Origin: Selaginella moellendorffii
Taxonomy: Eukaryota > Plantae > Lycopodiophyta
Direction of reading: 5' to 3'
Length of the DNA: 64,000 bases
Assembly: GCF_000143415.4 (NCBI RefSeq)
Contig: NW_003314300.1
Location: 1,285,014 to 1,349,013, forward strand
Part shown: piece by piece, positions 3,135-63,539 of the stretch
Layout: each line of letters opens with the position of its first letter
Numbering within the stretch: the first letter of the stretch is position 1
Program-made: the position numbers and the translations under genes
Notes under the pieces: model-generated
Database searches by the model: none
What the model was told of the DNA's origin: nothing
The model's input: only the letters and a program-made list of their open reading frames with translations

Positions 3135-3234
3135 NNNNNNNNNNNNNNNNNNNNNNNNNNNNNNNNNNNNNNNNNNNNNNNNNNNNNNNNNNNNNNNNNN
3201 NNNNNNNNNNNNNNNNNNNNNNNNNNNNNNNNNN
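3135..3234. other. Assembly gap (100 N)
   Basis: Run of N shortly after a long poly-G tract. Confidence 1.
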
Positions 3235-3249
3235 GATTTCAGAATTAAA

Positions 3250-3903
3250 TAATGAAGTGATAGTGGAGGGGATCTGATATCCTTTGAATAAGGTCAAAGT
3301 CATTGGTAGCATGTGTGCTCATCGTGAAAGAAGAATAGAATTGTAGGCTTTGAGGGCATCTGTTGGGATCACTGTGTTTTGTTGTTATAGGAATGTGGGA
3401 TTGGGTAAAACATCTTCCCATGTCTAGTCTCCTGTCTGCATCAGGTTTAATTGGCTCTCAGAAATTAGTTGCTAAGTGTCCTAATGTTACCTATACTTGT
3501 TGCATCGAGATATTTCATTAAGTTTAGTATGTTAGATTTTTCTACTTCTTGTTGTATCTATTGCTTCTGGTGATGATGAATAAAGTGATGTAATGGGATC
3601 TCTAAAACCATGTGTGCATAGTGAGAAAAGTGAAGAAACAATCCAACTTTTACTTAAGTTTGGAGAACTGTCCACTAACACGAGGAGCTAAGAGAGAACC
3701 AAGAACTAGCCACTTTTCTGTACTCCTTGTGTAAGGTGTAGCAAATGCCTAGTTGTGGGATAAACTGTTTGTGGTGGTAAAACACCTGCCACAAGCTTTA
3801 AGACACACAAGAAAATGCTCATAAATGCCTTAACACTTGCTCTATACTTAGGAATTTATCTCCTCTTGACCAATGCCGCTCAAACCAAGTTGAAACAAAT
3901 AAA
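3250..3903 (+). repeat. Near-perfect ~650-bp direct duplicate of 10237-10891
   Basis: Identical by eye except a 1-bp indel near the end (GACCAATGCC vs GACCAAATGCC). Abuts the gap. Confidence 0.9.
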
Positions 3904-10200: not shown

Positions 10201-12290
10201 AATAGATGAATGGTGGAAGACAGTGATGGCCGATTGTAATGAAGTGATAGTGGAGGGGATCTGATATCCTTTGAATAAGGTCAAAGTCATTGGTAGCATG
10301 TGTGCTCATCGTGAAAGAAGAATAGAATTGTAGGCTTTGAGGGCATCTGTTGGGATCACTGTGTTTTGTTGTTATAGGAATGTGGGATTGGGTAAAACAT
10401 CTTCCCATGTCTAGTCTCCTGTCTGCATCAGGTTTAATTGGCTCTCAGAAATTAGTTGCTAAGTGTCCTAATGTTACCTATACTTGTTGCATCGAGATAT
10501 TTCATTAAGTTTAGTATGTTAGATTTTTCTACTTCTTGTTGTATCTATTGCTTCTGGTGATGATGAATAAAGTGATGTAATGGGATCTCTAAAACCATGT
10601 GTGCATAGTGAGAAAAGTGAAGAAACAATCCAACTTTTACTTAAGTTTGGAGAACTGTCCACTAACACGAGGAGCTAAGAGAGAACCAAGAACTAGCCAC
10701 TTTTCTGTACTCCTTGTGTAAGGTGTAGCAAATGCCTAGTTGTGGGATAAACTGTTTGTGGTGGTAAAACACCTGCCACAAGCTTTAAGACACACAAGAA
10801 AATGCTCATAAATGCCTTAACACTTGCTCTATACTTAGGAATTTATCTCCTCTTGACCAAATGCCGCTCAAACCAAGTTGAAACAAATAAAGTGGAAGGG
10901 GTACTTACACATAAACACTTTTCTGAGCTTTGAAACAAAGTTTATAATAAAATATTTGTGGCAAAATCAAAGAAAGAATAAAATCTTTTTTCACAACCTA
11001 AACAAGAAAACACCTTGGAAAAAAATATGTTCAAACTCCTGATCTAGAGTAGGAAAATTGATGGGATTAAATGCAAATGAAACTTAGGATTATGCGGAAT
11101 TTTTTTCTAGAAGTAACCTTCACAAAAAACTCAAAAAGATTCACTCAATTCTTTCAACCATGGCAAGTACTTACCTCAAAAGAAAAATATAACAAATCTT
11201 AAAGCATAAAACTCCTAAAATTACATTCTTGGGCTTGGGAAAAAACTTTTCACCTCCTCTATAGCTCCATGTAGAAAAAGATTGGAAATTTCCTTTTAGG
11301 AGCTGAAAAAGGTAAGAAGCTCAAAAACCTTTCCCTACACTCAAAATAAATAAACTTGAAAAATTGCTCTAAGTCATTCCAAATTGACTCAAATCTCGCA
11401 TACAAACCCTGTAAATAAAGCTCATGAGTAAATTTATCCAAAGAGCCCAAAAAATTATTGAAATGGTGGTGTATCCAACTCATGCCAAGCTTCTAAAGTT
11501 ACTGTTATGCACACTACGAAGAAATGGAAGATACATGTGTTGATTCTTGCATTAAATCCAAAAATTCTTAATATTAAACCACATACCTCAACAAGATCTA
11601 CAAACCCATAATCATCATTTCTCAAATTGATTCCCCAATGAGCCATGAAAAGAAGAAAATTGACTTATTTTGTCCTAAAAGAAAGAAAACTCAAAAAATC
11701 TTTAACATTTAAGCATGGTACTTAGAATTTTTCAGATGGAAACATTCCTCCTTGCTTATAAGATCTCTTCAATATCAACACCATCACCAAAATTCATATT
11801 TCTCAAGCATTTGCTCCAAAACCCCAAGAAAAACGAAAAAACCAAGAGGAGGATTAGATAGAAAGCAATCCTCCCTAATAGAGTTGCCAGATGTTGAAAG
11901 GAATGCCTCTCAACAGTGGGGAAAACACTCTCTCATTCTTTAAAATTTTGCTTAAACATACTTTTTATGTGAACTCCTTTGCTCTAGAAAATGAGGAAGA
12001 AGAACATCTCCTCACAACTTTATAATATTCTAGGGAATCTCACTTAAAGCAGTTGGTAGAATTGCTTGATGCTATGCGATTGCAATTGAACAATCAAACT
12101 CAAACCATCTACTAATAAGAACAATACTATTGTGTTCAAGACACTTTTTATAATAAATGAATATGCCTCACTTGCAGATCCAAACACTTACTATAAATAG
12201 CATATGGAACCACAATAAGACCAACACATAGGGTATGATAATGAGGGTGTTTAGCAGGCATAGTAAGTTATTATCTAGTAAGTGTTGAAG
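7291..12290 (-). mobile_element. Highly degenerate third copy of the same LTR family with nested insertions
   Basis: LTR piece ending TTTACAACA at 7819 followed by PPT complement CTTTTCCCCCCT. Internal homology to ~8520 and at 9160-9316. Decayed PBS, then LTR start at 9321 that breaks at ~9560 and resumes at ~12100-12290. Confidence 0.6.
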
Positions 12291-12539: not shown

Positions 12540-14440
12540 ACCACCCCCAATTGCATGAGTTTCAAAAGTTTAAACCTTTAAAGTATGCAGAACTATCAAG
12601 TTCTAAAAGATTAGATCTATGATATGGAAAATTATTTCATAGTGGCAAATGTAGATGATCATATGAAGATTACATGTGTGCAATCCTTTCTCACTAATTA
12701 TGCCTAAACTTAATGGCGCTAGGTATGTGCTAAAAAAGGTAGACTAAAAGTTAAATTAAGATGCAATCTTGTATCCAAGGAGTACTTGCTAGATGATCTT
12801 GGTCTAAGATTCCATATAGAACGTATAGAGAGTAGTAGTTAAAGTAATTTGAGAACTTTATACATTATGCTAATGCATTTGCTCAAAAACACATTATAAT
12901 TACAAATATAAGTGATGAAGATGCTCGAAGTTATTCCTTGAAAGTTTTTCTCACAATGAGGTTTTAAAATTTAAACAAAAAACATACCTATAGTGTACGA
13001 AGGCAACACAACAAGTTGCCTTAAATCACTCATTCATAAAATAGTATTAACAACCATATGTTAGTACTTTGGACAAGAATAAAATCTCTAGGAATAAACA
13101 AGGTGATAAATAAAGGATGGAAGGAAAGTTCTACTTTGGAGGCTCATAAGCAAAAGTTAATAAAGGTGGTGGTTGGCAACCACCAGTAACTTCTTTTGAT
13201 CCTAGGCCCTCTATTCTTCCTTCTAGTAAGTATAAGCAGTAACAACTTGTGAAATTCATGAATCATAAACTTTGTCTACAAACACTTAATGCGTACACAA
13301 GAGCTATGCACAACGTGATATCCAAAGATTTAGTCAGGTTGTTAGGATTAAAAGTTGAGCAACAAATGTCTCCCATACACTTTTGGTTTGCAAAAAGTGG
13401 GCAAATAGCTAGAAAATTTATACATGATGTACTAATAAAGATATCCAAGTGGAAAGAAAGATTAAATTTAGTAGCGTTGAAGATACCAAACTTTCAAATG
13501 GATTTCTTCAACAAATATATCAAAGGGATATATAGTGCTAGACAAATTCATATCACATTAAGATTAAAAGGACATCCTAATGTATCTTTTTAATTGTAAA
13601 AGCACTCTTCCAAGGATTGGGATGCTAAGTTCTTGACAACGAGAGTAACTTAAAAAGCAACTAAAAAGGGATATTGGACTTTTTGGGTTTAAATGATAGT
13701 AGCTAAAAGTGATTGTGATTAGATTTGAATTGGTGATGGGGTTGATCCTATACTAAAAGAAATCCTCAAATTGTTGGTGAGGAATTAGGATATCTTCTTG
13801 AAAGATGTACCACTAGAGCTACCTTCTAGCCATGAAATTAATCATCAGATTGAAATTGTTTTGGGCTCTAAATTGCCTATAAAGGTTTCATATCATTTGA
13901 ACATCAAGGAGATAGCTGAACTCAAAAGAGTAACTCATGGAGCTTCTTGATAAATATTATATTTGCTGAGCACTGGTCTTTTTTGCTATGAAAAAGGATG
14001 GTACCATGAGGATGTGTATCAATTATCAACATGATTACAGTCAAAAATAGTTATTTATTACCTCTCATTGATGACTTATTTGACCAACTTTTAAAAGCTA
14101 AGTATTTTATGTGATTGGATTTATGGTTTGAGTATCATCAAATACAGTTAATAGATCAAAATATGGAGAAGACAACCTTTAAAACTTGTTATAGATCCTA
14201 TAAATTCATGGTTATGCTGTTCGGGTTATGTAATGCCTTAATAAATAAAATATTTAAAAATTATTTAGACACATTTGTTGTTTTATATAATGACAATATT
14301 CTAGTCTTTAGTGAAACATTGGAGTACCATTTAAAACATTTAGAATTAATGTTTTAAAAGTTGTAGGAACACAAGTTATATGTTAAGGAGAGTAAATGCA
14401 CTTTTATGCAATTGCATGGGAACTTTCTTGGGCATATAGT
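12540..14440 (+). mobile_element. Ty3/gypsy gag-protease-RT relic, truncated in RT
   Basis: Protease-like ...HNVISKDLVRLLGLKVE; RT motifs KKDGTMRMCINY, LPLIDDLFDQL, DLWFEYHQI, VMLFGLCNA, VVLYNDNILVFS (YLDD decayed), FLGHIV. Stops and frameshifts throughout. Confidence 0.85.
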
Positions 14441-15389
14441 TCGCTACATATATCAATTTTCTTTAGGTATAGGATATAGAGAAATAGATCATATTATAAT
14501 AGTAGGGCATATTAGCATACTTCCATTCTTTCAGGTGAGACTGCCTTTAAATCTTGGAAATGTAGATAAAGTTGATTCTTTGATGTGATATTACTTTTGA
14601 GTCTTTCAAAAGATTCTGATTTCTTTTATTATTATTCATAAATAACTCCTGAAAATTCTTATTGGGGATTCACTGCAAAATTATACCTTAGTCTTTTCAT
14701 ATATGAGGATTTGCAATATAGGCAGGCAATAGAGTTTTTAATATAAATTAATATATAAATTAAATATCATGAAAAGTTTTATAGAGTAAATTTCTTGATG
14801 CTTTTTGTAGTACTATTCATTTCTTCATTTCTCTTGCTCTAAACTATTGTTTTAGAAGTAATAAGTATTTTTATCAATAGTGACAGTGATATCTATATTT
14901 CTATATGAGTAATAAGAACCAGAAGTGTAATATGGAAATTGTGGTTGTGCACTAAAGTTAACATTCTCACATTCTTTTGTGTTACAACTTTTACTCACAA
15001 ATTTTATATTTTCCTTACTTCCCATCTTCTCAAGAACCTTAGAAAAAACTTTCAATAAAGGAATAATATATAAATATATGATAGCTGTAAAATTAGCTAA
15101 AATATGATATAATCAAATAAAAATATAACAACTGTAATAGTAGTCAGTAAAATAATATATCTTTAGAAAAGATAAATTTTAGCTCACTTTGTCTTTTTTA
15201 AATGAGTCATTCTAGTAGAAATTTTTGACCCAGATACTTACATGTTTCAATATTTTAAAGTTTATTAGAACCTTTCATTTCTTCAATTTAGATTTCTTTT
15301 ACAAGACTTTAGTTGACTGCATTGACTTGTGTTGGCTTGTGTTGAGTTGAGTTCAACTTATGAGCTCAACTCAACTTTGAACCACCCCC

Positions 15390-32095: not shown

Positions 32096-33920
32096 TCGAA
32101 GAGAAAGAGCGAGGCCTCTTGAGCAGCGTGATGGTTCTCACTTTTTAAGGTGTCATTTAAGTTCTTTTGCCATTCGTTTTAGTATATGACAGTTTTGCAC
32201 GGCGTCTGCAGGCGGAGGCCATTTTTCCAGGCAGCTAGGAAGGCATTAATTTTCACGACAAATGTAACATATCTGTACACTGAAAATTCGGAGATGTTAA
32301 ATGTGAATCTTCACGATTTTGAGTCGGTATGTATGATACATAAGTTTGCTTGGTTGTGTGAGGCTTTGGTAACAACGGCAGAGCCCAAGTCCACTGGCTA
32401 CACTTATTTGTAAACCAGTGGGCACCCCACTTCTAAGCTCTCACCTTTCCATGCTTCCAGTGAGTGGGCAATCAGATGACTAACTAATTTCAAAAGGTTT
32501 TCAATGAGTTAAGCAAACTAAAATTCATACATAATGTAGTTTGTAAGCATTTAATTAAAGAGATAATTAGTTATAAAAGAAACTTCATATTAAACTGTAA
32601 TACAGATATATAATTAGTTTTAGCGAGATTTAAAATAGATTAGTTTTTTTTGTTTTTCTTAATGTGATCTAAAAAGTTAATTACAATTTTAAAATATAGT
32701 TTTCAAAATATTTTATCTATTTTGAAATATTTAAGAGACCCCTTCTAAATTTGATTAACTTGGTTTCGAGTGTGCTCAATTTTTTAAAGTAGCTAATATC
32801 ATATAAATAATACTACTTATCTTTTCAAACATATTACTTTAAGATAAGTTTTATTTCAAAACTAAATTAGCCATAAAATAAACTTTTTATGAATAAATGA
32901 TCATATCAGCTTTTAGTAGTACATAATAAGTATATAGAATTGTCACTAGCTATTAAATATATATTGGTATATAAATTTATTTTAAAAAAATTATTGTGCT
33001 AATAGGTATCACTTTGTCTTGGTTGATATAATATATCCCAAAGTGAGCAATTATAATATACATAGTTATTCTAATTTAGTTAAATCAATATAAGTTATTG
33101 GATAGAATATTTCTTACAATAGAAGCTTTACATATGAACTTTCATATTATTTAGTTTAGCATGCTAATAAGTTTACAAAAGTTTGTAAAAAAAACTCATC
33201 TTGACATCTTTATATTATGTGATAAATTCTATAAATATCACACTAAGTTTAGAAGCTTTATAAAAAAAATTTTGAAATAATAAGTTGAATTGCCATGATA
33301 AATTAATTAGGTCTTTGTAAGAACTTTGTATCATTTTCTCTTTAATTCTCCCATCCTTATCTATCCAGTAATATCAAAGTATCACAATAACATTATTAGC
33401 ACCAATATCAAAGTTATTCACTTTTAAAAAAGTAATTTCCTCCATAAATTAATTTTTTTGGAAGGAATTTCGTACATACAATTTAATTTTTTTATTTTTA
33501 TGTTTTTTTTATTTGCCAATACAACCTTCTAAGCACTTGGATTCATCAATTTTAATTAATCATATACAATCCACTGTATCTGTAAAGATCACAATTACTC
33601 ATTTAAAATTAATTTGTCATGACCAAAGAAATAAATAAAGTATGTTAAATAAGCAATTTCACCTATCACTTAATGCATTCACTAGTTGGCCACAGCCTAA
33701 TTATGGATTAAATAAATTAAACACTACACTTATAACACCCAAAATTAAATCAATATTAATAATGTTTAAATTAAAATCTAAATTTTGTCTCTTTTAATAT
33801 TGGGTTATGGAAATATCGTTTGGACAAGAAAAGCTCAATGATAGGAACTAAACTAAAACTTCATAAGTAATTAATTTTATTAGCTAATTTAATTTATTAT
33901 ATGTACAGCTATGGAACCCT

Positions 33921-35800
33921 ATGGATACAAAATGTTCAGTGATTTCCAGAGATATGATTATAGCTGAAGATGTTGATTGGACTCTATTGAGTGGCTCAAA
34001 ATTATTTATAGCTTATTTAGAATTCAAGGATATACCAAAGTTCAAGCAAAACAAATGTTTGGACATCAAATTAAAAACAAAACATCCACTAGGAGATATA
34101 ATAAGATTAATAGAATCAAGCTATCACACAATGATAGGGTATGATGTTACTTATTATACTTAAATCTCATTCTAATAAATAATTGTTATAAGTATTTATA
34201 TGAATATGACAAAGAAGATCACTGCCACACTTTTAAATTAGTTATACCTCTGAAATCTAAAACTTGGAAACAGTAAGAATCTAATAAATTGTTAAATAGT
34301 TTTACATATGGCTAGATTATACATAAATTATAGAGAACACTGTGATTTAGTAGGGATTCTATATCATGGTCAACTTGATCTTATTAGAGATGGATAATCT
34401 CTTTTACCATAAAAGCTCTCAATGGAGGTCTTTTATATGATCCAATAGGATCATACACCAAATTAAATTTATAATGATCACATAACTATGGTGGCTAAAA
34501 ATAAATTTATTAGTGATAGCATATATTGTGATGATTTCATGAGCTTCCAAGACATCAATAACTTATCAAAGAAGTATGCAACTTCATATAGCTATTGGTG
34601 TCATCCAAATGATGCTTAAAGCGTTTATATCTAGAAAATCTGCCAATCTAGAAAAAGTGTCTTTCTACCAAGAAAGGGATGGCATTTACATTTTGGAATT
34701 TAATCAACTTAGCAGTGTCAGAAAATGATTGAATATGGTTGTAATAGTTTATTTAGTTTGGGTGTTACTTTTGGAACCAACTGTTATAAGGTATAGTTGC
34801 AATGGTTAATAATATTTATAATTAATTAACCTGATATAGTTTACATTATATACCATCATTGTTTTCAATAACCACAATAGCAGTATCTCTATTGCTTGGA
34901 CGAACTTCAAGTGAGAAAGGACATTACATAATACAATGGATGCATGTATTGAAAGATCAAATTTTGGAACAAAATAATATTAGAAGCCAAATGTAGTAAT
35001 TGTTGATGATGCTGAAGATGAGAGAAATGCTATAAGTATGAATTATTATTATATAATTAATTATAATTTGAAGGCCACATTCAGATGTGAGATCATATTA
35101 TGTATATATGGCATAGTAAAAGAAACAGGTTGAAGCTTCTAATTTGGAAAGTCAAATCTTTTGAGACTCATATAAGAATGTGGACCAACTTGAGAAGTAA
35201 TATTCTATACTGTTTGTGGCACTTATTTTGATGTTGGAAAACTACAAGTGGAAGCTATAGAGCTGATTGAAAAGTTTGAAGTTTATGTCAAATATGAAAA
35301 AGCTTTTCTAAAATATTTTTGTATTGAATGAAAATACAAAGTTATATCATAATACTCTTGATTTTGAATAATTATTATCAGTGTGGGTTGTACTTGCACA
35401 AAACTTTCAACATGCAAATAGCTCAATTAAGGCTTTTCATGCTAATATAAAATATATCCTCTTAACTGAGAAATATAGTAGAAATAGAAGAATGGATTGG
35501 GTGAACTAGCTTACAATTGAAGTTTACTCTAAACATTGGTTTATACATTAGTGCAAGATTTATGGTTTTATTCAAAGCCTTAAACAATAAAAACTGATTG
35601 ACAATGCTATCATAAATGCTCTTTAGATTAGCAACTCTCCAAGTTAATTTTAATGTGAATAAACTTAACTTAACAAGCGTCTCTAACAAGAACAAGAAAG
35701 TTGTTATATTCAACCATCACATTTGAATGAAGCATGATATATCCTTACCACAACAAGATATGGAAATACTAAATCTGAAAGAGGTATTATAAAAATCTAA
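33921..35800 (+). mobile_element. Decayed Mutator-like (MULE/SWIM-type) transposase
   Basis: AEDVDWT..AYLEFKDIPKF, VTFGTN (~34765), VFNNHNSSISIAW, KPNVVIVDDAEDERNAI (~34985), C.WH, SIKAFHANIK, RRMDW. Resembles the At4g13970/At1g60560-type MULE domain. Many stops; no TIRs found. Confidence 0.65.
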
Positions 35801-37110
35801 AATAATTATTTAGAATTGAATATCTTTGTTTTGACAGAATGAAGAATTTCTAACACATGAACAATATACATGTGCTAGTGTTGAAGATACATTACATGTA
35901 TCAGAATCAAGAGTACAAGATGTTAGAGTATAGAAGATGGAATTTACTTAAGTTACCTAAGAGAAACTTTAATTGTTGATGATAAACATGCTTAATAAAA
36001 TTCCAAATAATGAAGTATTTATAGTTATGCAATGATTTAAAGATTTTGGATAAAAATATTGATACTTTTTAACCTAAACCAGAAGATTTTATTTATCTAG
36101 TGAAAAAATTCAAATAATGAGAAGATGGATATAGTACATCCTTAAAGCAAGTTAGACCCTTGGTCAAGAAGATTTATGGGAAAGAAAAAGCTAAAGTATC
36201 AATAAATGATACAACTCCCTTTAGTCAACCTAAGAAACTGAGGCATAAAAGTTATTTTCAAGGAGAATCTTATTTAATAATATAATATATAATTTTTTTA
36301 GGCTAAATAAAGTTTTATATACTGTTTTATAATGGTAAGAAAAATTTTACACCACTATAAGCTGCAAGTGACTGCCAGGATAAACCAAAATGCTTCACTT
36401 AGTATCTTACACTTAGAAAATTTTTGCTCATCAAAAGTGGCTAATACTTAGGCCAGTGGGCATGGTTCATGTAGAAGTTCCCATATACAGGCTTGCCCCT
36501 CAACCTATACTATCTTCTTCTCCCCCACCACATTTTGATATATCCTTGGCCACATGAGTTTTAATGTGGCAAAGACAATAAGATTCAACAGGAAACCCAG
36601 AATCCCAACCATGAATAGAATCTTAGACAATATATAATGCTCTTCACAACTACTATATTCAATCTACAGCCAAAGCCACCCAAAGTAGCACCATTGTTGA
36701 TAGTTAATTGAGGCCAGCAGCCATTGCCATAACTTCAGCCACTATCCAAGTTAGATCTAAAAAGTTGAATATACAATTAAATCTATACTATTGATAAAGT
36801 GCAAAGGAATTGATTGATAGTGTATCATGGCTTGATCTACAATGAAGTGGGGTTTTTGGCAATCAATCCATTGCAACTTGAGCATAATATATTTCACAAA
36901 AATATTGGTGGCAACTGAACCATCAACTCTATTTCTATCACTTCTGAGATTATATGTTTTGTTTTTTATATGAAAGTCATAGTTTATTCTTAACTTGGAA
37001 GGTATATATTATTTTTATAAAAAGAAATTCAAAGTCATAAAGTGCTGAAGTCAAAGTCTACTAGTTACTTTATATGACAATATAAATATCCCTATTTACT
37101 TCAATATAAT

Positions 37111-37575
37111 ATGGCTAAATATAGATTTAAATATTTCGTTTTTCTATTTATTTATTTAAATAGATATGTATTTTCAACTCAGGTATGTTGAAATTTCCAT
37201 AGGATATAATTAAATAATATTTTTTTATAGTGTAATTATGGAATAAATATAAAAACTGGTTGCAATCATAACGCAGGAACATATGCAAATATTGATATAA
37301 CACTTAGTTTTTCTTTTGGAACAATTTTAAATTTTCATGATATTGATGATAAAGATGATAATTTTGAAAAATGCCATACTGATTCATTCAATTATCTTAA
37401 AAAATGTCCGCTTCCCAAAGAAAGATTGTGTAAAATACATATACAACGAGATAATAATGGATTATACCCTAATTGGTTTATTGAAAGACTTTTAATTTTT
37501 AAAGACAACCATTTAATTGCAGAACTAAATATTGAAGCATGGATTAATACCGAGAACGAAGTACTACTATGTTAA
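37111..37575 (+). CDS. Secreted single-domain PLAT/LH2 protein (ATS3/PLAT-like), 2 exons, 138 aa
   Basis: Exon 1 37111-37182 (MAKYRFKYFVFLFIYLNRYVFSTQ), phase-0 GT-AG intron 37183-37230, exon 2 37231-37575: CNYGINIKTGCNHNAGTYANIDITL...DNFEKCHTDSF...CP...LCKIHIQRDNNGLYPNWFIERL...AWI...LLC*. TATAAATA at 37081. Confidence 0.85.
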
Positions 37576-49606: not shown

Positions 49607-52579
49607 ATGCATTTCAAGGAGCTGCTCAGGGCGCTGTGGAGCGATCGCGAGGTGTTTGCCACCGGAGGTGAGATCGATGGCAGCTCGTTCCAGATGCCAT
49701 CGTCGCTGCTCGTCGAAGGCGTCGGTAATGTCGAGCTTCCTCTCTCGCAAGAGGGTCTTGACAAGCTCAAGGCCGTGTCCCAGCAAGCCCCTTACGGACT
49801 TGGAGAGAGGACTGTGGTGGACACGGACGTGAGACGAGCATGGCAGATCAATCCCGGTCGAATCTCCTGCCCCGAAAATCCAAGGTTCTTTTCTTCTGTG
49901 GCTCAAGAACTCGCCGCCGCTGGGCTGGCCGCCATGGGACTCGACTCCAAAGCTCTGGAGCTCGACGCTAGGCTCTACAAGCTCCTCCTCTACGAAGCTG
50001 GCGGCCACTTCAAGTTCCACAGGGACACGGAGAAAGAGGGTGGCATGTTTGCGACGATGATCGTCCAGCTCCCTACGGCGTCTGGCCACACCGGAGGGGC
50101 TCTCACGGTTCGCCAGGGAAGGCAGTGCTCCAGGTTTGATTTCTCCGAGGGGAGCTCCGGCCGCTGCTTCTCGACGATTTTCTTTTGCGACTGCGAGCAC
50201 CAGCTTGAGAAGGTGGCCAGTGGATCGAGGCTGTGCCTGGTGTTTAGCCTGGTGAGGAACAACGTCGACTTCATACCGGCAGGGACGGTCCCCTCGTTCG
50301 TCTCCGCGTTGCCTCGAGTTAGAGCTCTTCTCCAGCAGTGGGCCGAGAGTGGAGATGGAGCAGCAGCCGAGAGTGGAGATGGAGCAGCTATGATAACGCA
50401 GCAAGACTACCGCCAACGAAATGAGAGACGTTTCGTTCGTGACAGGAAGCTTTTGGTGATTCCGCTGGCTCACAAGTACTCGAAGACGAGTCTCTCTTTC
50501 GCCGGGCTCAAGGGACACGACCGAGTGGTGGCAGCACTGGTGAGAGCTTGCGAGTTCCTGGATCTCCATCTGTGCATGCTCACCAAGCACAAGACCGTGA
50601 CGGATTACTTCCAGAACGAGTACGTGATCGATAACTGGCTCTCCATCGACGACCAGCCGGCCAAGTTCAAGCAGTGGCACATCGATTTCACGCGGCAGGT
50701 TCTCAGGTGTGCTCCACCGCCCGCAGGGATGATCATGGAGGACGAAGAGGCCGAGGGCGAGGTTGAAGACCAGAGGAACGAGCGGGACGTGTTTGATTTC
50801 ATCGAGGACGAGTTCCGCGGCACGGAGATGATGGCGGGCAACGAGGGTGGCAGCGAGCAGTACTTTTACCACGTCGCGGCGCTGGTGGTGTGGCCAAAGG
50901 TGGCGAGGAGCTCGACGATCTGCCCGTCGCTCGGGGACATCTCTTGGGTGCTCGAGTGGCTGCGGGAGATTTACGGGGACGAGTTCGCAGCTATGGAGGA
51001 GCCCCGGAGGTTCTTGGAAGAGGCAGTGGACGGGTTAACGCGGAAGTTCGCTTCGGTTGCTCCGTGGGGTCAAACGAGGCAGAACGACATGCACTGGCGA
51101 CTGGCAAGGAACATGAGCAAGAATTTCCAGGAACTCTATCGAGAGCCCGCGATGCTGCTCGAGCTGTGCGTGAAGTCGGGGCTTCGCGAGTCGGCCTTTG
51201 CGATCCTCAGGACCTGGGTGGCGGAGCTGATCAGTCTCGACGAGTTTGCGAGAGCAGTGCATGCCTACGGCTGGGAGGCGTGCCGAGAGATCGTGGAGAC
51301 GGCGCTCGTCGGCGTGTTTCACAGTGGATTCCTTCCGTGGAAGCTGCACCGCTGCGGATGCAACGACGGGGCGGTCGCGGCTGCCAAGCTGCTCTGCCGG
51401 AGCGTCGCCACCTCGGAACAGCCGCAGTACGGGCCAGCGCCATGGCAATCCATGGTCCGCCGCTTTGGCAGGGATAGCCAGGGGTTCCAGCCGGAAGGTG
51501 GTGTCCAGAGCCTGCTCGACTTTTGCCTCACCAACGGGCTCCGCGACGAGGCCTCCCAGATCCTTGGAAAGGTCCCCCTGGCGGTGCTGAGCTTCCGGAT
51601 GATGGCTATGGTGGTGCACCACTTCCCGGAGCGCATGAAGGAGGTGGAGGTCCTGTGGGAGGAGCAGAGGGTGGCGGTAAGCTCCAGTGATCCATCATCC
51701 CGCGATGCAAAGGCGAGCGAGATGAGGTTCATCGGTGGGATTCTCGAGTTCGCGCTGCAGCTGGAAGCTCTGGGACATCTGGAAGCGGCGCGGGCATTTG
51801 CGGCAAAGTCTTTGCAGCTGCCCGGCTTCCCAGAGAAGGCGGAGCAATACCAGCCCTGGCGGCAGTGGCTCGATGAACCCGACGTCATGCTGCTCATGCT
51901 GCTCGACAAGCCTGAGAACTTACGTGTGAGAACCAGCGAGCACTGTCGCGGTGAGGTGGTCAGGGCGATGCTAAGAGCTGGGCGATTGATGGGCTTGAAG
52001 GACAAGGCGGAGATGAAGCGGCTGTTTTGCGAGCTCTGCAAGGTGGAGCTTGCAGAGGTGATGGACAAGGCGGAGCTGAATTCCTGGGCCGGGGATCCAT
52101 CGCCCCTCAATCAGAAGGGCGAGAAGATCAGGCAGTTCACGACGTGGAAGAATTACATGACTTGGGCGGAGCAAAAGGAGTTCCTGGAGATGGCGCTGTT
52201 TTGGCTCGAGGACGAGGGAGTGCTCGACAGGGTGGTGGAGCTGGCGAGCAAGAGGATGAATATGGTGAAGAGGATGGTGGAGGAGGGATTTGTGGAGAAA
52301 GCGATCGCGAGCGGGATGGTTGGATCGAGGCACGCGATGAGGAGGCTTGTGGAGGCGAGGATGGAGTACCTGGCGAGGGAGCCGAGCATGGACGATGTGG
52401 AGGGGGATTTCCTGCCGCCGGCGTCCAAGGTGATGAGGATCTGTGGCGCGGTGGATGCGCGGCAGCTCGAGGATAATCCGCGGCAGCTGCGCCGGGCGCA
52501 CGAGATTGTGGTGGAGAAGTGGAGGGCGATTTGCAAGGATGAGATGGAGTCGCTTCGAGCCTTGAGAGAAATCCTTTGA
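49607..52579 (+). CDS. 2OG-Fe(II) dioxygenase-domain protein (fungal/bacterial type) with long helical C-terminus, intronless, 990 aa
   Basis: APYGLGERTVVDTDVRRAWQI, LYKLLLYEAGGHFKFHRDTEK (HxD), HTGGAL, DCEH (distal His), GSRLCL (2OG-binding Arg), L.HKYS..SLSF..LKGHD, GNEG..Y..AALVVWP. Confidence 0.85.
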   Translation: MHFKELLRALWSDREVFATGGEIDGSSFQMPSSLLVEGVGNVELPLSQEGLDKLKAVSQQAPYGLGERTVVDTDVRRAWQINPGRISCPENPRFFSSVAQELAAAGLAAMGLDSKALELDARLYKLLLYEAGGHFKFHRDTEKEGGMFATMIVQLPTASGHTGGALTVRQGRQCSRFDFSEGSSGRCFSTIFFCDCEHQLEKVASGSRLCLVFSLVRNNVDFIPAGTVPSFVSALPRVRALLQQWAESGDGAAAESGDGAAMITQQDYRQRNERRFVRDRKLLVIPLAHKYSKTSLSFAGLKGHDRVVAALVRACEFLDLHLCMLTKHKTVTDYFQNEYVIDNWLSIDDQPAKFKQWHIDFTRQVLRCAPPPAGMIMEDEEAEGEVEDQRNERDVFDFIEDEFRGTEMMAGNEGGSEQYFYHVAALVVWPKVARSSTICPSLGDISWVLEWLREIYGDEFAAMEEPRRFLEEAVDGLTRKFASVAPWGQTRQNDMHWRLARNMSKNFQELYREPAMLLELCVKSGLRESAFAILRTWVAELISLDEFARAVHAYGWEACREIVETALVGVFHSGFLPWKLHRCGCNDGAVAAAKLLCRSVATSEQPQYGPAPWQSMVRRFGRDSQGFQPEGGVQSLLDFCLTNGLRDEASQILGKVPLAVLSFRMMAMVVHHFPERMKEVEVLWEEQRVAVSSSDPSSRDAKASEMRFIGGILEFALQLEALGHLEAARAFAAKSLQLPGFPEKAEQYQPWRQWLDEPDVMLLMLLDKPENLRVRTSEHCRGEVVRAMLRAGRLMGLKDKAEMKRLFCELCKVELAEVMDKAELNSWAGDPSPLNQKGEKIRQFTTWKNYMTWAEQKEFLEMALFWLEDEGVLDRVVELASKRMNMVKRMVEEGFVEKAIASGMVGSRHAMRRLVEARMEYLAREPSMDDVEGDFLPPASKVMRICGAVDARQLEDNPRQLRRAHEIVVEKWRAICKDEMESLRALREIL

Positions 52580-53901: not shown

Positions 53902-55158
53902 ATGCTCGAGGCGAGCGCGTTGCCAGGTATGGATGTGGATCCACAGCCACAGCCAGCGCAGTCGTACCAGGCAGTGCGCCTGGCGCTGGCCGTTGCGATC
54001 GTCAAGTCCCGCGGCGGGGCGGATCGCGGTGGCATTGCGGCCAAGAAGCGGCTCAAGGATGAAATTTCGCTGCTCCGGAGCGAGATCGAGAGGTTGCGCT
54101 CCAGCTCCGCGGAGCCGCTGGTGCCGCGCGTCCTGTGCAAGTGCTTCACGGATTCTTCCACTCCGCCTCCTCGCCGGCAGCGAAATATCCTGGCGCAACC
54201 GGAGTTCCACGAGGAATCTGTCGCTCGCCTCATGGACTGCGTCCGATTCCTCAATGGCTGCAAGAAACGCCGCCTCCTCGATGCCGGCAACCAAGAACAG
54301 GACGAAGAGAGGGCTCGTCGTTTGACGGAGATGGCGAATCTCATCGTCGAGCTCGTGTCAAGTACGAACGTCCAGCTTTTCTCCGTGTGGCTCCACCAGG
54401 CTGTGGATTTCTTTGAGAGCTGCGTCTCCAGCATTGGCGGCGAGAGATTCTCCACGGCGGCCCAGAGCGCCACGAAGAGATTGGTTGGGAGCCTCGTCGG
54501 CAAGGTGATGAGCTTCACGGACTCGGCAGAGAAATCCAAGGACGAGGCTCTCAAGCTCGATCACAGGCCTTTCATCGAGAAGGTCCTCCTCCACCTCGCC
54601 GAAGTTCCTTGTATCGGCCACAGGATCCTGACCGACGTATCTGGCCAGCTCGCAGTCATCGCCGAGGCGCTGTCGCAGGCGAGAGATCCATTCGCGGAGG
54701 AGACCACCCAGCTGCTCGAGAATTCCTACTTTCTTCTCGAGCTCATCTCGAAGGTGCTGGATTTTCCCTTCACTGGCTGGCTGGAAAAGTCGAAGCTGGA
54801 TCCCGACTTGCTGGAAGAATTCGTGGCGGAGTTCTTCCGGACCAAGGAGGCCACGCTCCGATCCAACCGGCTAAACTTCCTCTTCGTCGCCTACACAGAT
54901 CGGATCTGTGCTCAGGTGGTGAAGCAGCTCCACTCGGTCTCGTCAAGTCCACAGTGCAAGGACGTGAAGCTGCAAAAGATCGTCGCCAGCTCTCTCCAGC
55001 GTCTCCTGGATCTGGCCTCGTTGAGCTTCCACAGTGGTAAGAAAGAGCTTAGAGCTCTCTTCTTAGGTCTAACGCCACTATCATTTCTTCAGCGAAGCGA
55101 TCGAACCAATGAAGCATCGCAGCCTTTCTCACGTAACTCCCACGATTTTGATTCCTAG
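53902..55158 (+). CDS. PRD2: PRD2/MULTIPOLAR SPINDLE 1-like meiotic double-strand-break protein (MEI4-related)
   Basis: RLALAVAIVKSR, CKCF, FSVWLHQAVDF, PCIGHRI, DPFAEE, FVAYTDR occur in the same order as the recalled AtPRD2 motifs (RLAIAVSLLRSK, CKCYF, FSNWSHQAVDF, PFIGQRA, DPFDE, YMDR). A possible small terminal intron begins at ~55037. Confidence 0.8.
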   Translation: MLEASALPGMDVDPQPQPAQSYQAVRLALAVAIVKSRGGADRGGIAAKKRLKDEISLLRSEIERLRSSSAEPLVPRVLCKCFTDSSTPPPRRQRNILAQPEFHEESVARLMDCVRFLNGCKKRRLLDAGNQEQDEERARRLTEMANLIVELVSSTNVQLFSVWLHQAVDFFESCVSSIGGERFSTAAQSATKRLVGSLVGKVMSFTDSAEKSKDEALKLDHRPFIEKVLLHLAEVPCIGHRILTDVSGQLAVIAEALSQARDPFAEETTQLLENSYFLLELISKVLDFPFTGWLEKSKLDPDLLEEFVAEFFRTKEATLRSNRLNFLFVAYTDRICAQVVKQLHSVSSSPQCKDVKLQKIVASSLQRLLDLASLSFHSGKKELRALFLGLTPLSFLQRSDRTNEASQPFSRNSHDFDS

Positions 55159-55829: not shown

Positions 55830-56956
55830 TGTAGCGCACGTGGTTTTGACCCTTTATCCTATGGTGATTTACTAATGAAGCGGAACCTAAACCCTCTTTG
55901 TGCCACATGACAGATGCCACGTGTCACATGCCACGTGTCCATAGGAACCTGAGGTTCAGGGCCTTGGACCACTGAACGAAGGAACGGTGCCAAACTCCCA
56001 AGCATGGAGCTAAGGAGTGATGGAACCGAACCACGGAGCAACTCCTGAGCATAAAGCCCAAGGAGCGAAGGGACAGGGGCCCGGAGCGACTTGGAACAGT
56101 CCTAGAGTAACCAGCATCCCAATGCCAAGACTAGCACGCAAAACGGAGCCAAACGGAGTCTGGCGCTATTTCGGCATACCGGTGGCCTAACGCAAGGATA
56201 TGGGTACTCCACCAGCTAGCATGGAATGGAACTTGGGCTTAGACCCAAGCCAGACGCAGAACAAGGACAGGCACGCAAGCGGGAGCTAGACTATGCCTCA
56301 GGTTGGTCGGCCATGCCCGACCTACCCACTATCCCTACAATACATTTGGAACCCCCCACAGCCCCCCCCCCCCCCCCTCTTGAGGAACACACGCTTTGGG
56401 CTTTCACCCCAAGCCTCCCTTAGTATTAAGAGTTAGTCTCTGGGACAAGCTCGAAACTTACTAAATATGGAATGTCCCTAGATTGCGAATTTGGACATGG
56501 GACGAACACCATTGTATTCAGGACGATCTCTACATTCCGTAGATATGCCAAATGAGCAAATCTGGACACTTTCCATAATTAGCATTTGGGACCGAAATGA
56601 GACTAACACAAAGGGCATGATAGCAAGGGTGTTTGGCAGACACGGTAAGCTATCATCCGGCGATATTGAGGGACCAATCTCAATACGCGAGGGTTCTTGC
56701 CAAGCCAGTGCAAGACAGAGCAAAAGAGAACTAAGAGCCAGGCCAAGTATGCTCAGCTAGAAACACATAGGAGTTCCTACCTTATGTCCATCTGGCTAAG
56801 TACAGGTGCTAAGCCCAGTAAACTAACACTTGAACAAGAGGGACTGATAAAGGGAACCAGCAATACCGACCTCCTGCCATCGTGGCAGTAAGGTAAGAGT
56901 GTCCGTAAGGACTAGCCGACAGGTAACTTTCGATACCCGAAGTCACATTCGCGACA
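55830..56956 (-). repeat. 3' LTR (1127 bp)
   Basis: Direct repeat of 61955-63100. Flanked internally by PPT (minus strand AGGGGGGGAGAG, 56957-56968). Confidence 0.95.
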
Positions 56957-59900
56957 CTCTCCCCCCCTAGGGAAGATCGACGTCCTCGTCGATGCATACT
57001 CGAGTCTAGAATACCGCCAAGGAAACAACTCCAGAAAAAGTTCACGGTACTCACACTATGTGAGAAATGCACCAACTTAAATGAGTTAGGGGGCAACCTC
57101 TTTGTCTAACGCGGATGCGCTACCAGCTCAGACACCTTCCGGCCGTCGCCGACAAAGAAATGACCAACGGAGTCAACCACCCTTGCTGCTCTGGGAGTCA
57201 CCCAGCTTACAAAAGTGTGATACGCCCCTGCCCGCAGGGACATAGAGAGAGAAGCTAAAGGCCCCAACCCTCCTGAGCAAAGAAACCAAACCCGTCGGTA
57301 AGGTTTAGATAGACTACTGTAAACAGGCAGTTAGAGTTGTTTACACGGTCACGCCCTTTTAACGGAATAAGGAACATCGACAGAGAGGCGGGTTATGTGA
57401 CCAGTCGACAGTAGCTACCCCATGACTAGAGATTTCAACATGCACATGAAGTGCCGAAGCCAGTCTACCTATACTGACCCAAACTCAAAGATCAATAGAT
57501 GGACAATATCAAAGTCATAGACAATGATATCTTAGAGTCTTAATTATCAGTGAATAAATCTTATATTAGAACACAAATGTATTCCAAGTAAGTTATCATC
57601 TGATAAACCAGTATTATAGTAGATAGGAACCACCAAGATCATCAAAATTGGTAAACACAGAATGCACCATCCAACAAAATTCAATAGCTAGTATATCATC
57701 AAGGAAACTCAATGATGAAACTTAACTACCGAAGATGGCAGATAGTATTCCAAGTAACTTACTAAAGATAACTCATAGCACATAAAGGATCATCGACTAG
57801 CAAGCAAAATGCTCGCGAATGTATCACTCGAAGGAAATAACATTCGAATCTATCAAAGTGAACTCAAGCAATAATCAACAGAACAGAATGAATGTTCCAT
57901 GGCTAACAAACACTCGTTCATGCCAACTATCACACTAGCCAATCTGAATAGACCCCGGTCAACAATACCAAGGAACCAGAGTTGCTCTAGCAAGTGTCAG
58001 CAACATCCTATCAATGTCTCAAACCCAAGAGACCAATCCAGAGCAAACCACAAAGAATATGTGGTATTGCGAAAAGCCAAAAGCTATCAAAGAGAACAAC
58101 TAACCATCATGAAAGATCATTAATCATCCCATCAAAAAGATATGCCAAATCATCGTCAAGCAAGAATCTACCATCCCGAAGAATAGCAAATAATTCCAGA
58201 CCAACAATAATCAAGCAAAACTTTTGATAAGGATAATCAACTACCCTAGATGATAGTCAATCATCACCAATGATTGCCATATACAAATACCAACTTCAAC
58301 ATCGAAGCTAACAAGCCAAAATGCCTTCCCCAACAACTCTTAACAAATGGAACAATGAGCATAAAATTCAAAGAACTAAAAGCTCGAAGAAGCCTATAGC
58401 CAAGTCGTGCCTAGCAATGATCACAAGTTTTGCATGAACTAACTTCAATGCTAAAGAAGAAATCATGGTGCAACCCACAATATCTTCCTCAACAGATCCA
58501 TAAGCTAGACTTCATAATGCCAAAGCTAATGAAGAGCATATCTGCATCAATCCAAAAGTTAAGCATAATGAAGCTATGCTTAACAAGTGATCACCAAACG
58601 ATCCTCCATGAATCCATCTATAGCAAAACGTAACTCACTTCATAACAAGCACAAGAAGAATCATCAAGGATCAATATATCCCAATTCAAATCCAACAAAG
58701 ATTTGATCACTTCAATATTGATCACTAACTCTTCCACTTGTAGAGTTAGCATAGTTCACAACTGAATCACTTTTCAAGAAAAAGCCAAAGCTCAACCTCT
58801 ACTAAATAATCTCGTCTAGAACACAACTAACTCAAACTTGCCACTCAATTCATTTGAACGTCAACATAGTTGCTAACTAGCAAATGCGCGAATGCTAATA
58901 ACACAAAGCTATAACCAAATCATCAACACTATCTTCATTGAGAGCAATGAAACTCAATATCAATCCTAAGGATAGATATATCATCTCACCTGAATCTCAA
59001 CATCAATAATATCAATGACAAAGCATCACCTCAATGCCATCAACACCATAACAAAGCTAGAAGAAAGCAAGAGTGTATCACCACTCAAAGCTCTTTAGCA
59101 ACCAAGCTAACCAAAGTCGGAGATACTTTACTCAGTATCCGAGACCAATTTCTCAACAATACTCAGGTACAGATAACACTTCCTCAAGGAGTGAATCACC
59201 ACGTCCAAGACTCAATGAAATCCAACACCACGGACTAAATGTAACCAAATGATATCAATAGAGGTAAAATTGAAATGCTAACATGGAAAAACCATGTAAG
59301 TCTAACGACGCAATCCTCCGCAACACCATCCGGTAAAGCAAGCCCATCACCGCTAAACTATCATCGAGTGAAGCAAGTATCAGAGGTCCTCGACGAAGTC
59401 TATAAGCAACCATTAGTCGCAAGGCAACCAACAATCACTTTTCAACTTACCTTCACAAGACCCAAACACTAACTTTTTGTCATCAAGTCATATACTTGTC
59501 CGACATGAACATAATACCCCAGGTATGAAATAAAGGTTCATGGACAAGCATAAACTAAATGACTACTCGAATCCAACTCAACCGCGATAAGCTCACAAAC
59601 ACATCTAGTCAATAGCTCTGAGCATGCCTTGAAGAGGCTAGCTATGCATGATCAACACTCAGCCGAAACTAAAGTGAAGACCATGAGATGGATCTATATC
59701 AGTACACAACCTCCTCATAGACAAAGCTACAGTACGGGTACTAACATCTCAAACTCAAACAACTAAGTTGAACATCACCATCCTTAGCCAAGGTGCAGGG
59801 CCACCAAGACCAAATCAAGATCAGTGAGAGTTCACTACTCTCATAGAGTCTTAACAAAATGCAAGGTGCAACCTGCCACCGAGCATAATGCTACAAAAGA

Positions 59901-61954: not shown

Positions 61955-63100
61955 TGTAGCGCACGTGGTTTTGACCCTTTATCCTATGATGATTTACCAT
62001 AGGATAACACCACGAAGCGGAACCTAAACCCTCTTTGTGCCACATGACAGATGCCACGTGTCACATGCCACGTGTCCATGCCATGTGTCCATAGGAACCT
62101 GAGGTTCAGGGCCTTGGGCCACTGAACGAAGGAACGGTGCCAAACTCCCAAGCATGGAGCTAAGGAGTGATGGAACCGAACCACGGAGCAACTCCTGAGC
62201 ATAAAGCCCAAGGAGCGAAGGGACAGGGGCCCGGAGCGACTTGGAACAGTCCTAGAGTAACCAGCATCCCAATGCCAGGACCAGCACGCAAAACGGAGCC
62301 AAACGGAGTCTGGCGCTATTTCGGCATACCGGTGGCCTAACGCAAGGATATGGGTACTCCACCAACTAGCATGGAATGGAACTTGGGCTTAGACCCAAGC
62401 CGGACGCAGAACAAGGACAGGCATGCAAGCGGGAGCTAGACTATGCCTCAGGTTGGTCGGCCATGCCCGACCTACCCACTATCCCTACTATACATTTGGA
62501 ACCCCCCACAGCCCGCCCCCCCCTTGAGGAACACACACTTTGGGCTTTCACCCCAAGCCTCCCTTAGTATTAGGAGTTAGTCTCTGGGACAAGCTCGAAA
62601 CTTACTAAATATGGAATGTCCCTAGATTGCGAATTTGGACATGGGACGAACACCATTGTATTCAGGACGATCTCTACATTCCGTAGATATGCCAAATGAG
62701 CAAATCTGGACACTTTCCATAATTAGCATTTGGGACTGAAATGAGACTAACACAAAGGGCATGATAGCGAGGGTGTTTGGCAGACACGGTAAGCTATCAT
62801 CCGGCGATATTGAGGGACCAATCTCAATACGCGAAGGTTCTTGCCAAGCCAGTGCAAGACAAAGCAAAAGAGAACTAAGAGCCAGGCCAAGTATGCTCAG
62901 CTAGAAACACATAGGAGTTCCTACCTTATGTCCATCTGGCTAAGTACAGGTGCTAAGCCCAGTAAACTAACACTTGAACAAGAGGGACTGATAAAGGGAA
63001 CCAGCAATACCGACCTCCTGCCATCGTGGTAGTAAGGTAAGAGTGTCCGTAAGGACTAGCCGACAGGTAACTTTCGATACCCGAAGTCACATTCGCGACA
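61955..63100 (-). repeat. 5' LTR (1146 bp)
   Basis: Direct repeat of 55830-56956 with scattered SNPs and a few indels. Confidence 0.95.
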
Positions 63101-63539
63101 CTGATATAACAAACAAATTTGTACTAGTGCTTGCCTCATGAAGGCATGGCTCATCCATACCTACCTAGAACGCCTTTGTCACGCTAACACCTGAGCCAGG
63201 TGGGAACATACTGTCGGGACAAAATCCTAGATGTCCCGACGGAATGGCCTCTATGCCACATAACCAATAATAGAAATTCTCCAAAAATGTATAAATCATA
63301 TAAACTATATAGGTCTAATAGTAAAATCCTAAGGACAAAACACAAAACAAAACAATAAGACACTAAACTAACTCAATTAGATAATGAAGGGGTGCAATCC
63401 AATTAATTGACGCATGATTGCACTAGATCAAGACCCCTCATGTCACCATAACTGTTGATACCCTGGCTTGTACTCCATTAAAATGTGCTAAATTGCATGT
63501 TTCCCACACAACTTGGACCCCCATTGCTAACCAGACTGC

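What the first reader, a model, noticed from the sequence alone, without database searches (positions are those of the whole stretch)
37081..37575. Hidden, intact ~25%-GC secreted PLAT/LH2 gene inside an AT-rich transposon desert
Seen: ATG 37111, a 24-aa basic-then-hydrophobic exon, a 48-nt phase-0 GT-AG intron, and a 114-codon stop-free exon carrying the PLAT signature (C.Y.I.IKTG...AGT.A.I, FEKC..D.F, C..., D..G.YP.W, W) with six Cys. A TATA-like box lies 30 nt upstream. Hand count gives 103 G+C in 417 coding nt (~25%), whereas the neighbouring genes look far more GC-rich. The ORF track misses it, and gene finders trained on this genome probably would too. A rough estimate puts the chance of 114 stop-free codons at this composition near 1e-4 to 1e-5, while every adjacent TE frame is full of stops. 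Inference: either a live gene under selection in a compositionally shifted, probably methylated compartment, or TE cargo or a foreign acquisition. It may belong to an unannotated class of AT-rich secreted Cys-rich genes (defence or reproduction).
Basis: partly seen in the sequence, partly recalled or inferred. Interest (0 to 1): 0.85.

Follow-up and report, generated by a model that had tools for sequence, protein, structure and literature searches.

The report
Unannotated AT-rich spikemoss PLAT gene
The spikemoss Selaginella moellendorffii carries a small, intact but unannotated gene for a probably secreted lipid-binding (PLAT-domain) protein; it belongs to a native family whose DNA has the make-up of the plant's decayed repeat DNA rather than of its ordinary genes, and its expression and job are untested.

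Summary
The gene is real. The window is Selaginella moellendorffii scaffold GL377604.1. At 37111-37575 lies a two-exon gene (signal-type exon, 48-nt intron, PLAT exon; 138 aa; GC3 13% versus 68-83% in neighbours), missing from the JGI annotation. Pfam PLAT passes its cut-off, and the AlphaFold model (pLDDT 91) has the PLAT fold. A second copy on GL377639.1 (allele or recent duplicate) is intact, without indels, and half as diverged as its flanks. It is not foreign: it is the fastest-evolving member of a dispersed Selaginella family (at least eight partial JGI models). All inspected loci share the intron position, six cysteines (two more than bryophyte PLATs) and low GC3; the paralogues are CpG-depleted. 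The family is sister to moss and liverwort PLATs. Best reading: a live, secreted calcium/lipid-binding protein whose family has long evolved under transposon-like methylation, resembling maize TE-like-methylated pollen and endosperm genes. Allelic dN/dS of 0.75 and an Asp-to-Tyr change leave early decay open. The scan noted a like gene on another piece (s1-403045) and other AT-rich secreted families in this genome.

The parts
32500..39000 (.). AT-rich, CpG-depleted island (GC 17-34%) between a kinesin gene and a WD40 gene; decayed, stop-riddled DNA of unidentified origin
   Evidence: GC and CpG profile; six-frame stops; no Pfam match for pieces; 8-12% divergence and 13 gaps/kb against the second copy
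37016..37023 (+).
   Evidence: sequence; unchanged in the second copy; not more than chance in 80% AT DNA
37082..37089 (+). TATA-like element about 30 nt upstream of the ATG (weak)
   Evidence: sequence; identical in the second copy
37111..37182 (+). Exon 1: 24 codons, signal-peptide-like (basic start, hydrophobic core, likely cleavage after Ser22)
   Evidence: best 9-residue Kyte-Doolittle mean 2.46; paralogues have equivalent 21-27-codon hydrophobic exons; SignalP not available
37183..37230 (+). 48-nt phase-0 GT-AG intron (49 nt in the second copy; 42-64 nt in paralogues); a possible alternative donor 15 nt upstream
   Evidence: Marchantia intron one codon away; no junction reads
37231..37575 (+). 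Exon 2: complete PLAT/LH2 domain, 114 codons plus stop, six Cys, acidic loop motifs; Tyr42 replaces the conserved Asp of the AGTD motif in this copy
   Evidence: Pfam, PDB sequence hits, AlphaFold and fold search, family alignment, motif census

Best explanation
A native, live (or until very recently live) member of a Selaginella-expanded subfamily of land-plant single-PLAT proteins. Shown: gene structure, fold, family, vertical origin, long-term purifying selection, AT-shifted composition across the family. Inferred protein mechanism: the signal peptide sends it into the ER. The mature ~13-kDa acidic beta-sandwich is stapled by three disulfides (likely 25-138, 83-91 and the subfamily-specific 35-72). 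It binds Ca2+ and membrane lipid, or a partner protein, through its acidic loops, in the secretory pathway or the apoplast. It has no catalytic domain, so it acts as a lipid-surface binder or adaptor, most likely in a stress, defence or reproductive cell type. Inferred cause of the composition: these genes have long carried transposon-like cytosine methylation in the germ line, so C-to-T loss pushed silent sites to A/T while selection held the protein. They are presumably silent in most tissues and switched on in few.
For: PLAT above cut-off; pLDDT 91, PLAT fold, best Atlas match a streptophyte PLAT/ATS3 cluster, TM 0.88. Second copy intact: 17 substitutions in 414 nt versus 9.6% in flanks (p=9e-5) and 0 indels (p=0.004). 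23 of 29 family-invariant columns kept versus 22 of 85 others (p=6e-7); neutral AT-biased decay to 43% identity left an open frame in 6 of 2000 runs. dN/dS 0.35 versus the closest paralogue (p=1e-4; dS near saturation) and 0 N / 9 S between the two copies of paralogue P0079. Selaginella clade 96/95, sister to bryophyte PLATs 98/89. Paralogues: GC3 17-37%, codon-junction CpG 4 observed versus 20.5 expected, with TpG/CpA excess; neighbouring genes 346 versus 358. C/T differences at CHH cytosines 10-27% in the island, 6% in the gene, 1-3% in GC-rich flanks. Selaginella lepidophylla lacks gene-body methylation and has densely methylated repeat blocks (PMC5750206). The 35-72 pair co-occurs in all family members and in two bacterial secreted PLATs.
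Against: No RefSeq or Logan protein over 42% identical surfaced, so there is no sign of strong expression in sampled tissues, though these searches are lossy. dN/dS between the two copies is 0.75 (13 N, 4 S; not different from 1), exon 1 has 5 N and 0 S, and this copy has Tyr at the AGTD Asp (Asp in 549 of 710 collected motifs, Tyr in 3). This copy's own CpG is not depleted (3 observed versus 2.3 expected; second copy 1 versus 2.0). Ca2+/lipid binding and disulfide pairing rest on homology only.
Confidence: 0.6

Rival explanations
1. A formerly functional paralogue now under relaxed selection: a young pseudogene that has not yet picked up a stop or frameshift.
For: dN/dS 0.75 between the two copies, not different from 1; Asp-to-Tyr in the most conserved loop; five amino-acid-changing and no silent differences in exon 1; longest branch in the family (1.0 changes/site); no transcript-derived protein found.
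Against: Both copies intact, no indel where about 5 are expected, divergence less than half that of the flanks; start, splice sites, all six Cys and stop shared; paralogue L004 has a visibly decayed neighbour copy showing what decay looks like here.
Confidence: 0.2
2. The gene is live, but the AT shift comes from something other than methylation of the gene itself: residence in low-recombination DNA without GC-biased gene conversion, or a local mutation bias spilling over from neighbouring repeats.
For: Transversions are also raised in the island (2-7% versus 0.5-1.6%) and C/T differences hit CHH cytosines heavily; this copy shows no CpG deficit of its own.
Against: Paralogues in gene-dense surroundings (L005, L007) are still CpG-depleted and AT-rich; the family-wide CpG deficit with TpG/CpA excess is the classic deamination signature.
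Confidence: 0.12
3. Transposon cargo: a captured gene copy moved by a Pack-MULE or Helitron and kept open only because it is recent.
For: Family members are scattered over many scaffolds, mostly in AT-rich repeat-like blocks.
Against: No terminal inverted repeats or target-site repeats; no flank shared with other family loci and no near-identical donor (closest paralogue 42%); long-term purifying selection.
Confidence: 0.05
4. Foreign origin: the gene, or the whole six-Cys family, came from bacteria, or the island is a contaminant or misjoin.
For: Bacterial secreted PLATs (P0130, P0193; bacterial neighbours) carry the same extra Cys pair; holding the whole family together with them is not rejected (p-AU 0.3).
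Against: The free tree joins the family to bryophyte PLATs (98/89); four plant-type Cys are shared with bryophytes and absent from the bacterial proteins; intron within one codon of Marchantia's; the island and gene occur on two independent scaffolds next to the same WD40 gene; the gene alone with the bacterial pair is rejected (p-AU 0.012).
Confidence: 0.03

Closest known systems
Plant single-domain PLAT proteins (PLAT-plant-stress; Arabidopsis PLAT1 AT4G39730, PMC4232524; bryophyte relatives such as Marchantia MPTK1_6g17080)
   Same: Signal peptide plus one PLAT domain; four shared Cys; phase-0 intron just before the domain, with the domain on one exon as in Marchantia; sister clade to bryophyte proteins.
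   Different: Two extra Cys (TGC and FExC); no linker before the domain and no tail after it; only about 30% identity to bryophyte proteins; expanded, dispersed, GC3 13-37%. Angiosperm sequences were not retrieved, so orthology to PLAT1-3 is untested.
ATS3 / embryo-specific protein 3 family (PF06232)
   Same: All ten aligned family members match the profile at E<0.01.
   Different: This protein scores 24.5 and its second copy 26.7, both under the cut-off of 27; PLAT scores higher.
Maize TE-like-methylated (teM) pollen and endosperm genes (PMC10888782; bioRxiv 10.1101/2025.09.26.678861)
   Same: Short, zero- or one-intron genes for secreted proteins that look like transposon DNA and are poorly annotated.
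   Different: There methylation, demethylation by DNA glycosylases and very high cell-specific expression were measured; here only a sequence footprint is seen, in a seedless plant.
PLAT domains of animal lipoxygenases and polycystin-1
   Same: Same fold (TM 0.65-0.8) and aligned acidic loop motifs; Ca2+-dependent membrane binding is known there (PMC7436259).
   Different: Those domains are cytosolic parts of large enzymes or channels; this is a stand-alone secretory protein with no catalytic domain. The fold match to the clostridial alpha-toxin C-domain reflects the shared fold only and does not make it a toxin.

Membership tests
PLAT/LH2 domain (PF01477) | Profile score above the curated cut-off | tested here: met
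   27.6 bits versus 23; second copy 34.1
PLAT/LH2 domain (PF01477) | Eight-stranded beta-sandwich fold | tested here: met
   AlphaFold pLDDT 91, eight strands; Foldseek hits all PLAT domains
PLAT/LH2 domain (PF01477) | Ca2+-dependent membrane or lipid binding | not testable with these tools
   Acidic loop motifs align with 8R/11R-lipoxygenase; this copy lacks the AGTD Asp
Plant single-PLAT (PLAT-plant-stress) proteins | Single PLAT domain, under 200 aa, no catalytic domain | tested here: met
   138 aa
Plant single-PLAT (PLAT-plant-stress) proteins | N-terminal signal peptide | tested here: inconclusive
   Hydropathy and paralogue comparison favour one; SignalP not available; core weaker in the second copy
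Plant single-PLAT (PLAT-plant-stress) proteins | Groups with land-plant PLATs; four conserved Cys | tested here: met
   Sister to bryophyte PLATs 98/89; Cys 25, 83, 91, 138 shared
Plant single-PLAT (PLAT-plant-stress) proteins | Orthology to Arabidopsis PLAT1-3; stress or ABA induction | not tested
   No angiosperm sequences returned by the searches; no expression data
ATS3 (PF06232) | Profile score above the curated cut-off | tested here: not met
   24.5 and 26.7 versus 27
TE-like-methylated (teM) functional genes | Short, few introns, secreted product | tested here: met
   One 48-nt intron, 138 aa, signal-type exon
TE-like-methylated (teM) functional genes | CG plus CHG methylation in coding exons | not testable with these tools
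   Footprint only: family CpG 4 versus 20.5 expected; this copy uninformative
TE-like-methylated (teM) functional genes | High, cell-specific expression after demethylation | not testable with these tools
Transposon cargo (Pack-MULE/Helitron) | Element ends and target-site repeat around the gene; close donor copy | tested here: not met
   closest paralogue 42%

The most novel reading that the evidence does not exclude
Selaginella keeps a whole class of short secreted-protein genes, this six-Cys PLAT family among them, under permanent transposon-like methylation and switches them on by demethylation in one cell type (spores, gametophytes or attacked cells). That would be a seedless-plant counterpart of the maize pollen and endosperm teM genes, old enough to have reshaped their codon usage and hidden them from gene finders.
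Probability: 0.2. Interest if true: 0.75.

Novelty: new variant of a known kind. Interest (0 to 1): 0.42.

Why it matters
The gene itself is one more plant PLAT gene. What matters is the pattern: a lineage-expanded, six-cysteine PLAT subfamily with silent sites at 13-37% GC in a genome whose ordinary genes sit near 70-80%, missed or truncated by annotation. Because ordinary Selaginella genes carry no CpG deficit, base composition becomes a direct marker for genes with a history of transposon-like methylation. Existing methylomes and transcriptomes could then test whether demethylation-gated secreted genes predate seeds and pollen. It also shows that the S. moellendorffii secretome used in plant comparative genomics is incomplete. 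I found no paper on this family, though the library is partial.

Tried and rejected
All searches were made exon by exon, by reference; the joined 138-aa protein was never sent to a search tool (the exons were joined only inside local scripts to count bases and codons). The word-index homologue search on exon 2 was blank; the full scan found the family. The single-sequence structure prediction failed (pLDDT 41). The apparent CpG retention in this gene (o/e 0.95) was dropped as evidence: four of six CpGs differ in the second copy, whose o/e is 0.33. The exon 1 comparison had a one-base offset error and was redone. Pfam on stop-free island pieces gave nothing, so their transposon class is unproven. 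The metagenome scan gave only three distant loci at 26% identity. P0174 is a fragment of a multi-PLAT gene, not a close relative. Literature searches for Selaginella PLAT genes, GC3 bimodality and AT-rich genes found nothing relevant. The 11R-lipoxygenase structure paper was not held, so the Ca2+ role of the AGTD Asp rests on my own recollection of coral 8R-lipoxygenase and is unverified.

Full report
Source. The neighbouring WD40 protein clusters with XP_024516122.1 of Selaginella moellendorffii, and window 29817-51367 is 100% identical to scaffold GL377604.1. The JGI annotation calls no gene between the kinesin and the WD40 gene.

Observation. GC3 is 12.9% against 68-83% in five neighbouring ORFs. 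The open frame alone is only modest evidence once the whole island is counted (about 0.05, my arithmetic), and the TATA-like boxes are within chance. The homology is decisive: Pfam PLAT 27.6 bits over a cut-off of 23, ATS3 24.5 under a cut-off of 27; polycystin-1 and lipoxygenase PLAT domains by sequence; an AlphaFold model at pLDDT 91 with eight strands that matches only PLAT folds, best a streptophyte PLAT/ATS3 cluster at TM 0.88. The surroundings are a 6.5-kb island of 17-34% GC with CpG o/e under 0.1. It is full of stops, but no piece could be assigned to a transposon family.

Second copy. Scaffold GL377639.1 carries the same island and WD40 gene. It is probably the other haplotype, although synteny ends near window 46111, so a recent duplicate is possible. 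Its PLAT gene (L001 7722-8187) is intact. There are 17 substitutions in 414 coding nt against 9.6% in the flanks (p=9e-5), and no indel against 13 gaps/kb (p=0.004). Within the gene 13 changes alter amino acids and 4 are silent (dN/dS 0.75, not significant; exon 2 0.46; WD40 control 0.24). The window's copy has Tyr where the second copy, nearly all paralogues and 549 of 710 collected motifs have the Asp of AGTD. Over the long term selection is clear: 23 of 29 columns invariant in the paralogues are kept against 22 of 85 others, and neutral decay to this distance left an open frame in 6 of 2000 simulations.

Family. The best single-domain hits among 1.84 billion representatives are S. moellendorffii proteins at 36-42% identity. 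With cluster members and a profile search there are at least eight distinct JGI models (EFJ37721, EFJ32122, EFJ33735, EFJ26041, EFJ25868, EFJ04799, EFJ26146/EFJ10875, EFJ26202, EFJ38186; some may be alleles), nearly all partial and starting at the first Cys. In every locus inspected there is an unannotated hydrophobic first exon and a short phase-0 intron at or within three codons of the same place. GC3 is 17-23%, and 37% in the most gene-embedded copy. Codon-junction CpG is 4 against 20.5 expected, while neighbouring ordinary genes show 346 against 358. The two copies of P0079 differ by 9 silent and 0 amino-acid changes, so the family has clearly live members.

Origin. The ten Selaginella sequences form one clade (96/95), sister to moss and liverwort PLATs (98/89), with this gene on the longest branch, next to P0030 (126 columns only; no fern or seed-plant rows). 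The Marchantia gene has a phase-0 intron one codon before the same Cys and the domain on one exon. Four Cys are shared with bryophytes; the TGC and FExC pair is new. Two bacterial secreted PLATs carry the same pair. Joining this gene to them is rejected (p-AU 0.012); joining the whole family to them is not (0.3), but they lack the four plant Cys. Convergence on an extracellular disulfide is the simpler reading (inference).

How it most likely works. Shown: structure, fold, family, selection, composition. Inferred: entry into the ER by a signal peptide (hydropathy only); three disulfides (pairing from fold logic and co-occurrence, not measured); Ca2+- and lipid-surface binding through acidic loops, as known for lipoxygenase PLAT domains (PMC7436259); a non-catalytic role in the secretory pathway or apoplast. 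Arabidopsis PLAT1 has a predicted signal peptide and promotes stress tolerance (PMC4232524). For the composition, the family-wide CpG loss with TpG/CpA gain and the raised C/T differences in the island (CHH 10-27%, gene 6%, GC-rich flanks 1-3%) point to long exposure to transposon-like methylation. S. lepidophylla has unmethylated gene tracts between densely methylated repeat blocks (PMC5750206). The closest described system is the maize set of short, intron-poor, secreted, TE-like-methylated genes activated by demethylation in pollen and endosperm (PMC10888782; 10.1101/2025.09.26.678861). It resembles those genes in anatomy; membership needs methylation and expression data that I could not obtain.

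Searches were exon by exon, by reference; the joined protein was not searched. No other Selaginella species was reachable.

Verdict. A real, native, probably live gene (about 0.7 live; 0.2 early decay): a new variant of a known kind. Interest 0.42, carried by the compositional pattern of the family rather than by the protein. Other notes of this scan describe AT-rich secreted families in the same genome; I did not test those and they are leads only.

Noticed in passing
L007:10001-11124 (GL377565.1; EFJ38186.1): The JGI model joins a GC-rich (63%) Cys-rich first exon to an AT-rich PLAT gene that has its own ATG, signal-type exon and TATA-like box; probably two genes fused by annotation.
   Followed up: partly
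L004:8827-9166 (GL377585.1): A decayed PLAT copy with stops and frameshifts lies about 0.9 kb upstream of paralogue P0057, and P0057's own frame stops early at 102 aa: birth and death within the family.
   Followed up: partly
L009:1-14918 (GL377585.1): Paralogue EFJ26202 lies on the opposite strand inside the span of an annotated kinase model.
   Followed up: no
window ~46111; L001:16304: Similarity between GL377604.1 and GL377639.1 stops inside the wall-associated-kinase-like gene; beyond it the other scaffold has HAUS3-like and P450 genes instead. Haplotype rearrangement, duplicate boundary or misjoin.
   Followed up: no
window 49607-52579 (+): Intronless 990-aa ORF with a 2OG-Fe(II) oxygenase domain (26.4 bits, cut-off 27), exact sequence not in the protein collection; already noted by the scan as s1-355779.
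   Followed up: partly
window 53902-55158 (+): 418-aa GC-rich ORF without any Pfam match.
   Followed up: no
window 13243-14585 (+): Decayed LTR-retrotransposon remnant: aspartyl protease (RVP_2) and reverse-transcriptase pieces.
   Followed up: partly
window 55830-56958 and 61955-63102: Direct repeat of about 1.15 kb at 96% identity, probably the LTRs of a ~7.3-kb element; related copies at 2.5-9.5 kb.
   Followed up: no
window 3250-3903 and 10237-10891: 654-nt direct repeat at 99.8% identity next to the N gap at 3135-3234: a very young LTR pair or an assembly duplication.
   Followed up: no
L015:5001-6094 (Logan DRR438498): Bacterial contig with two tandem genes for secreted single-PLAT proteins, both with the TGC/FERC Cys pair.
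   Followed up: partly
window 32616-39000 versus L001: C/T differences between the two copies are high at CHH cytosines (10-27%), more than expected if CHH methylation is low as reported for S. lepidophylla; unexplained.
   Followed up: partly
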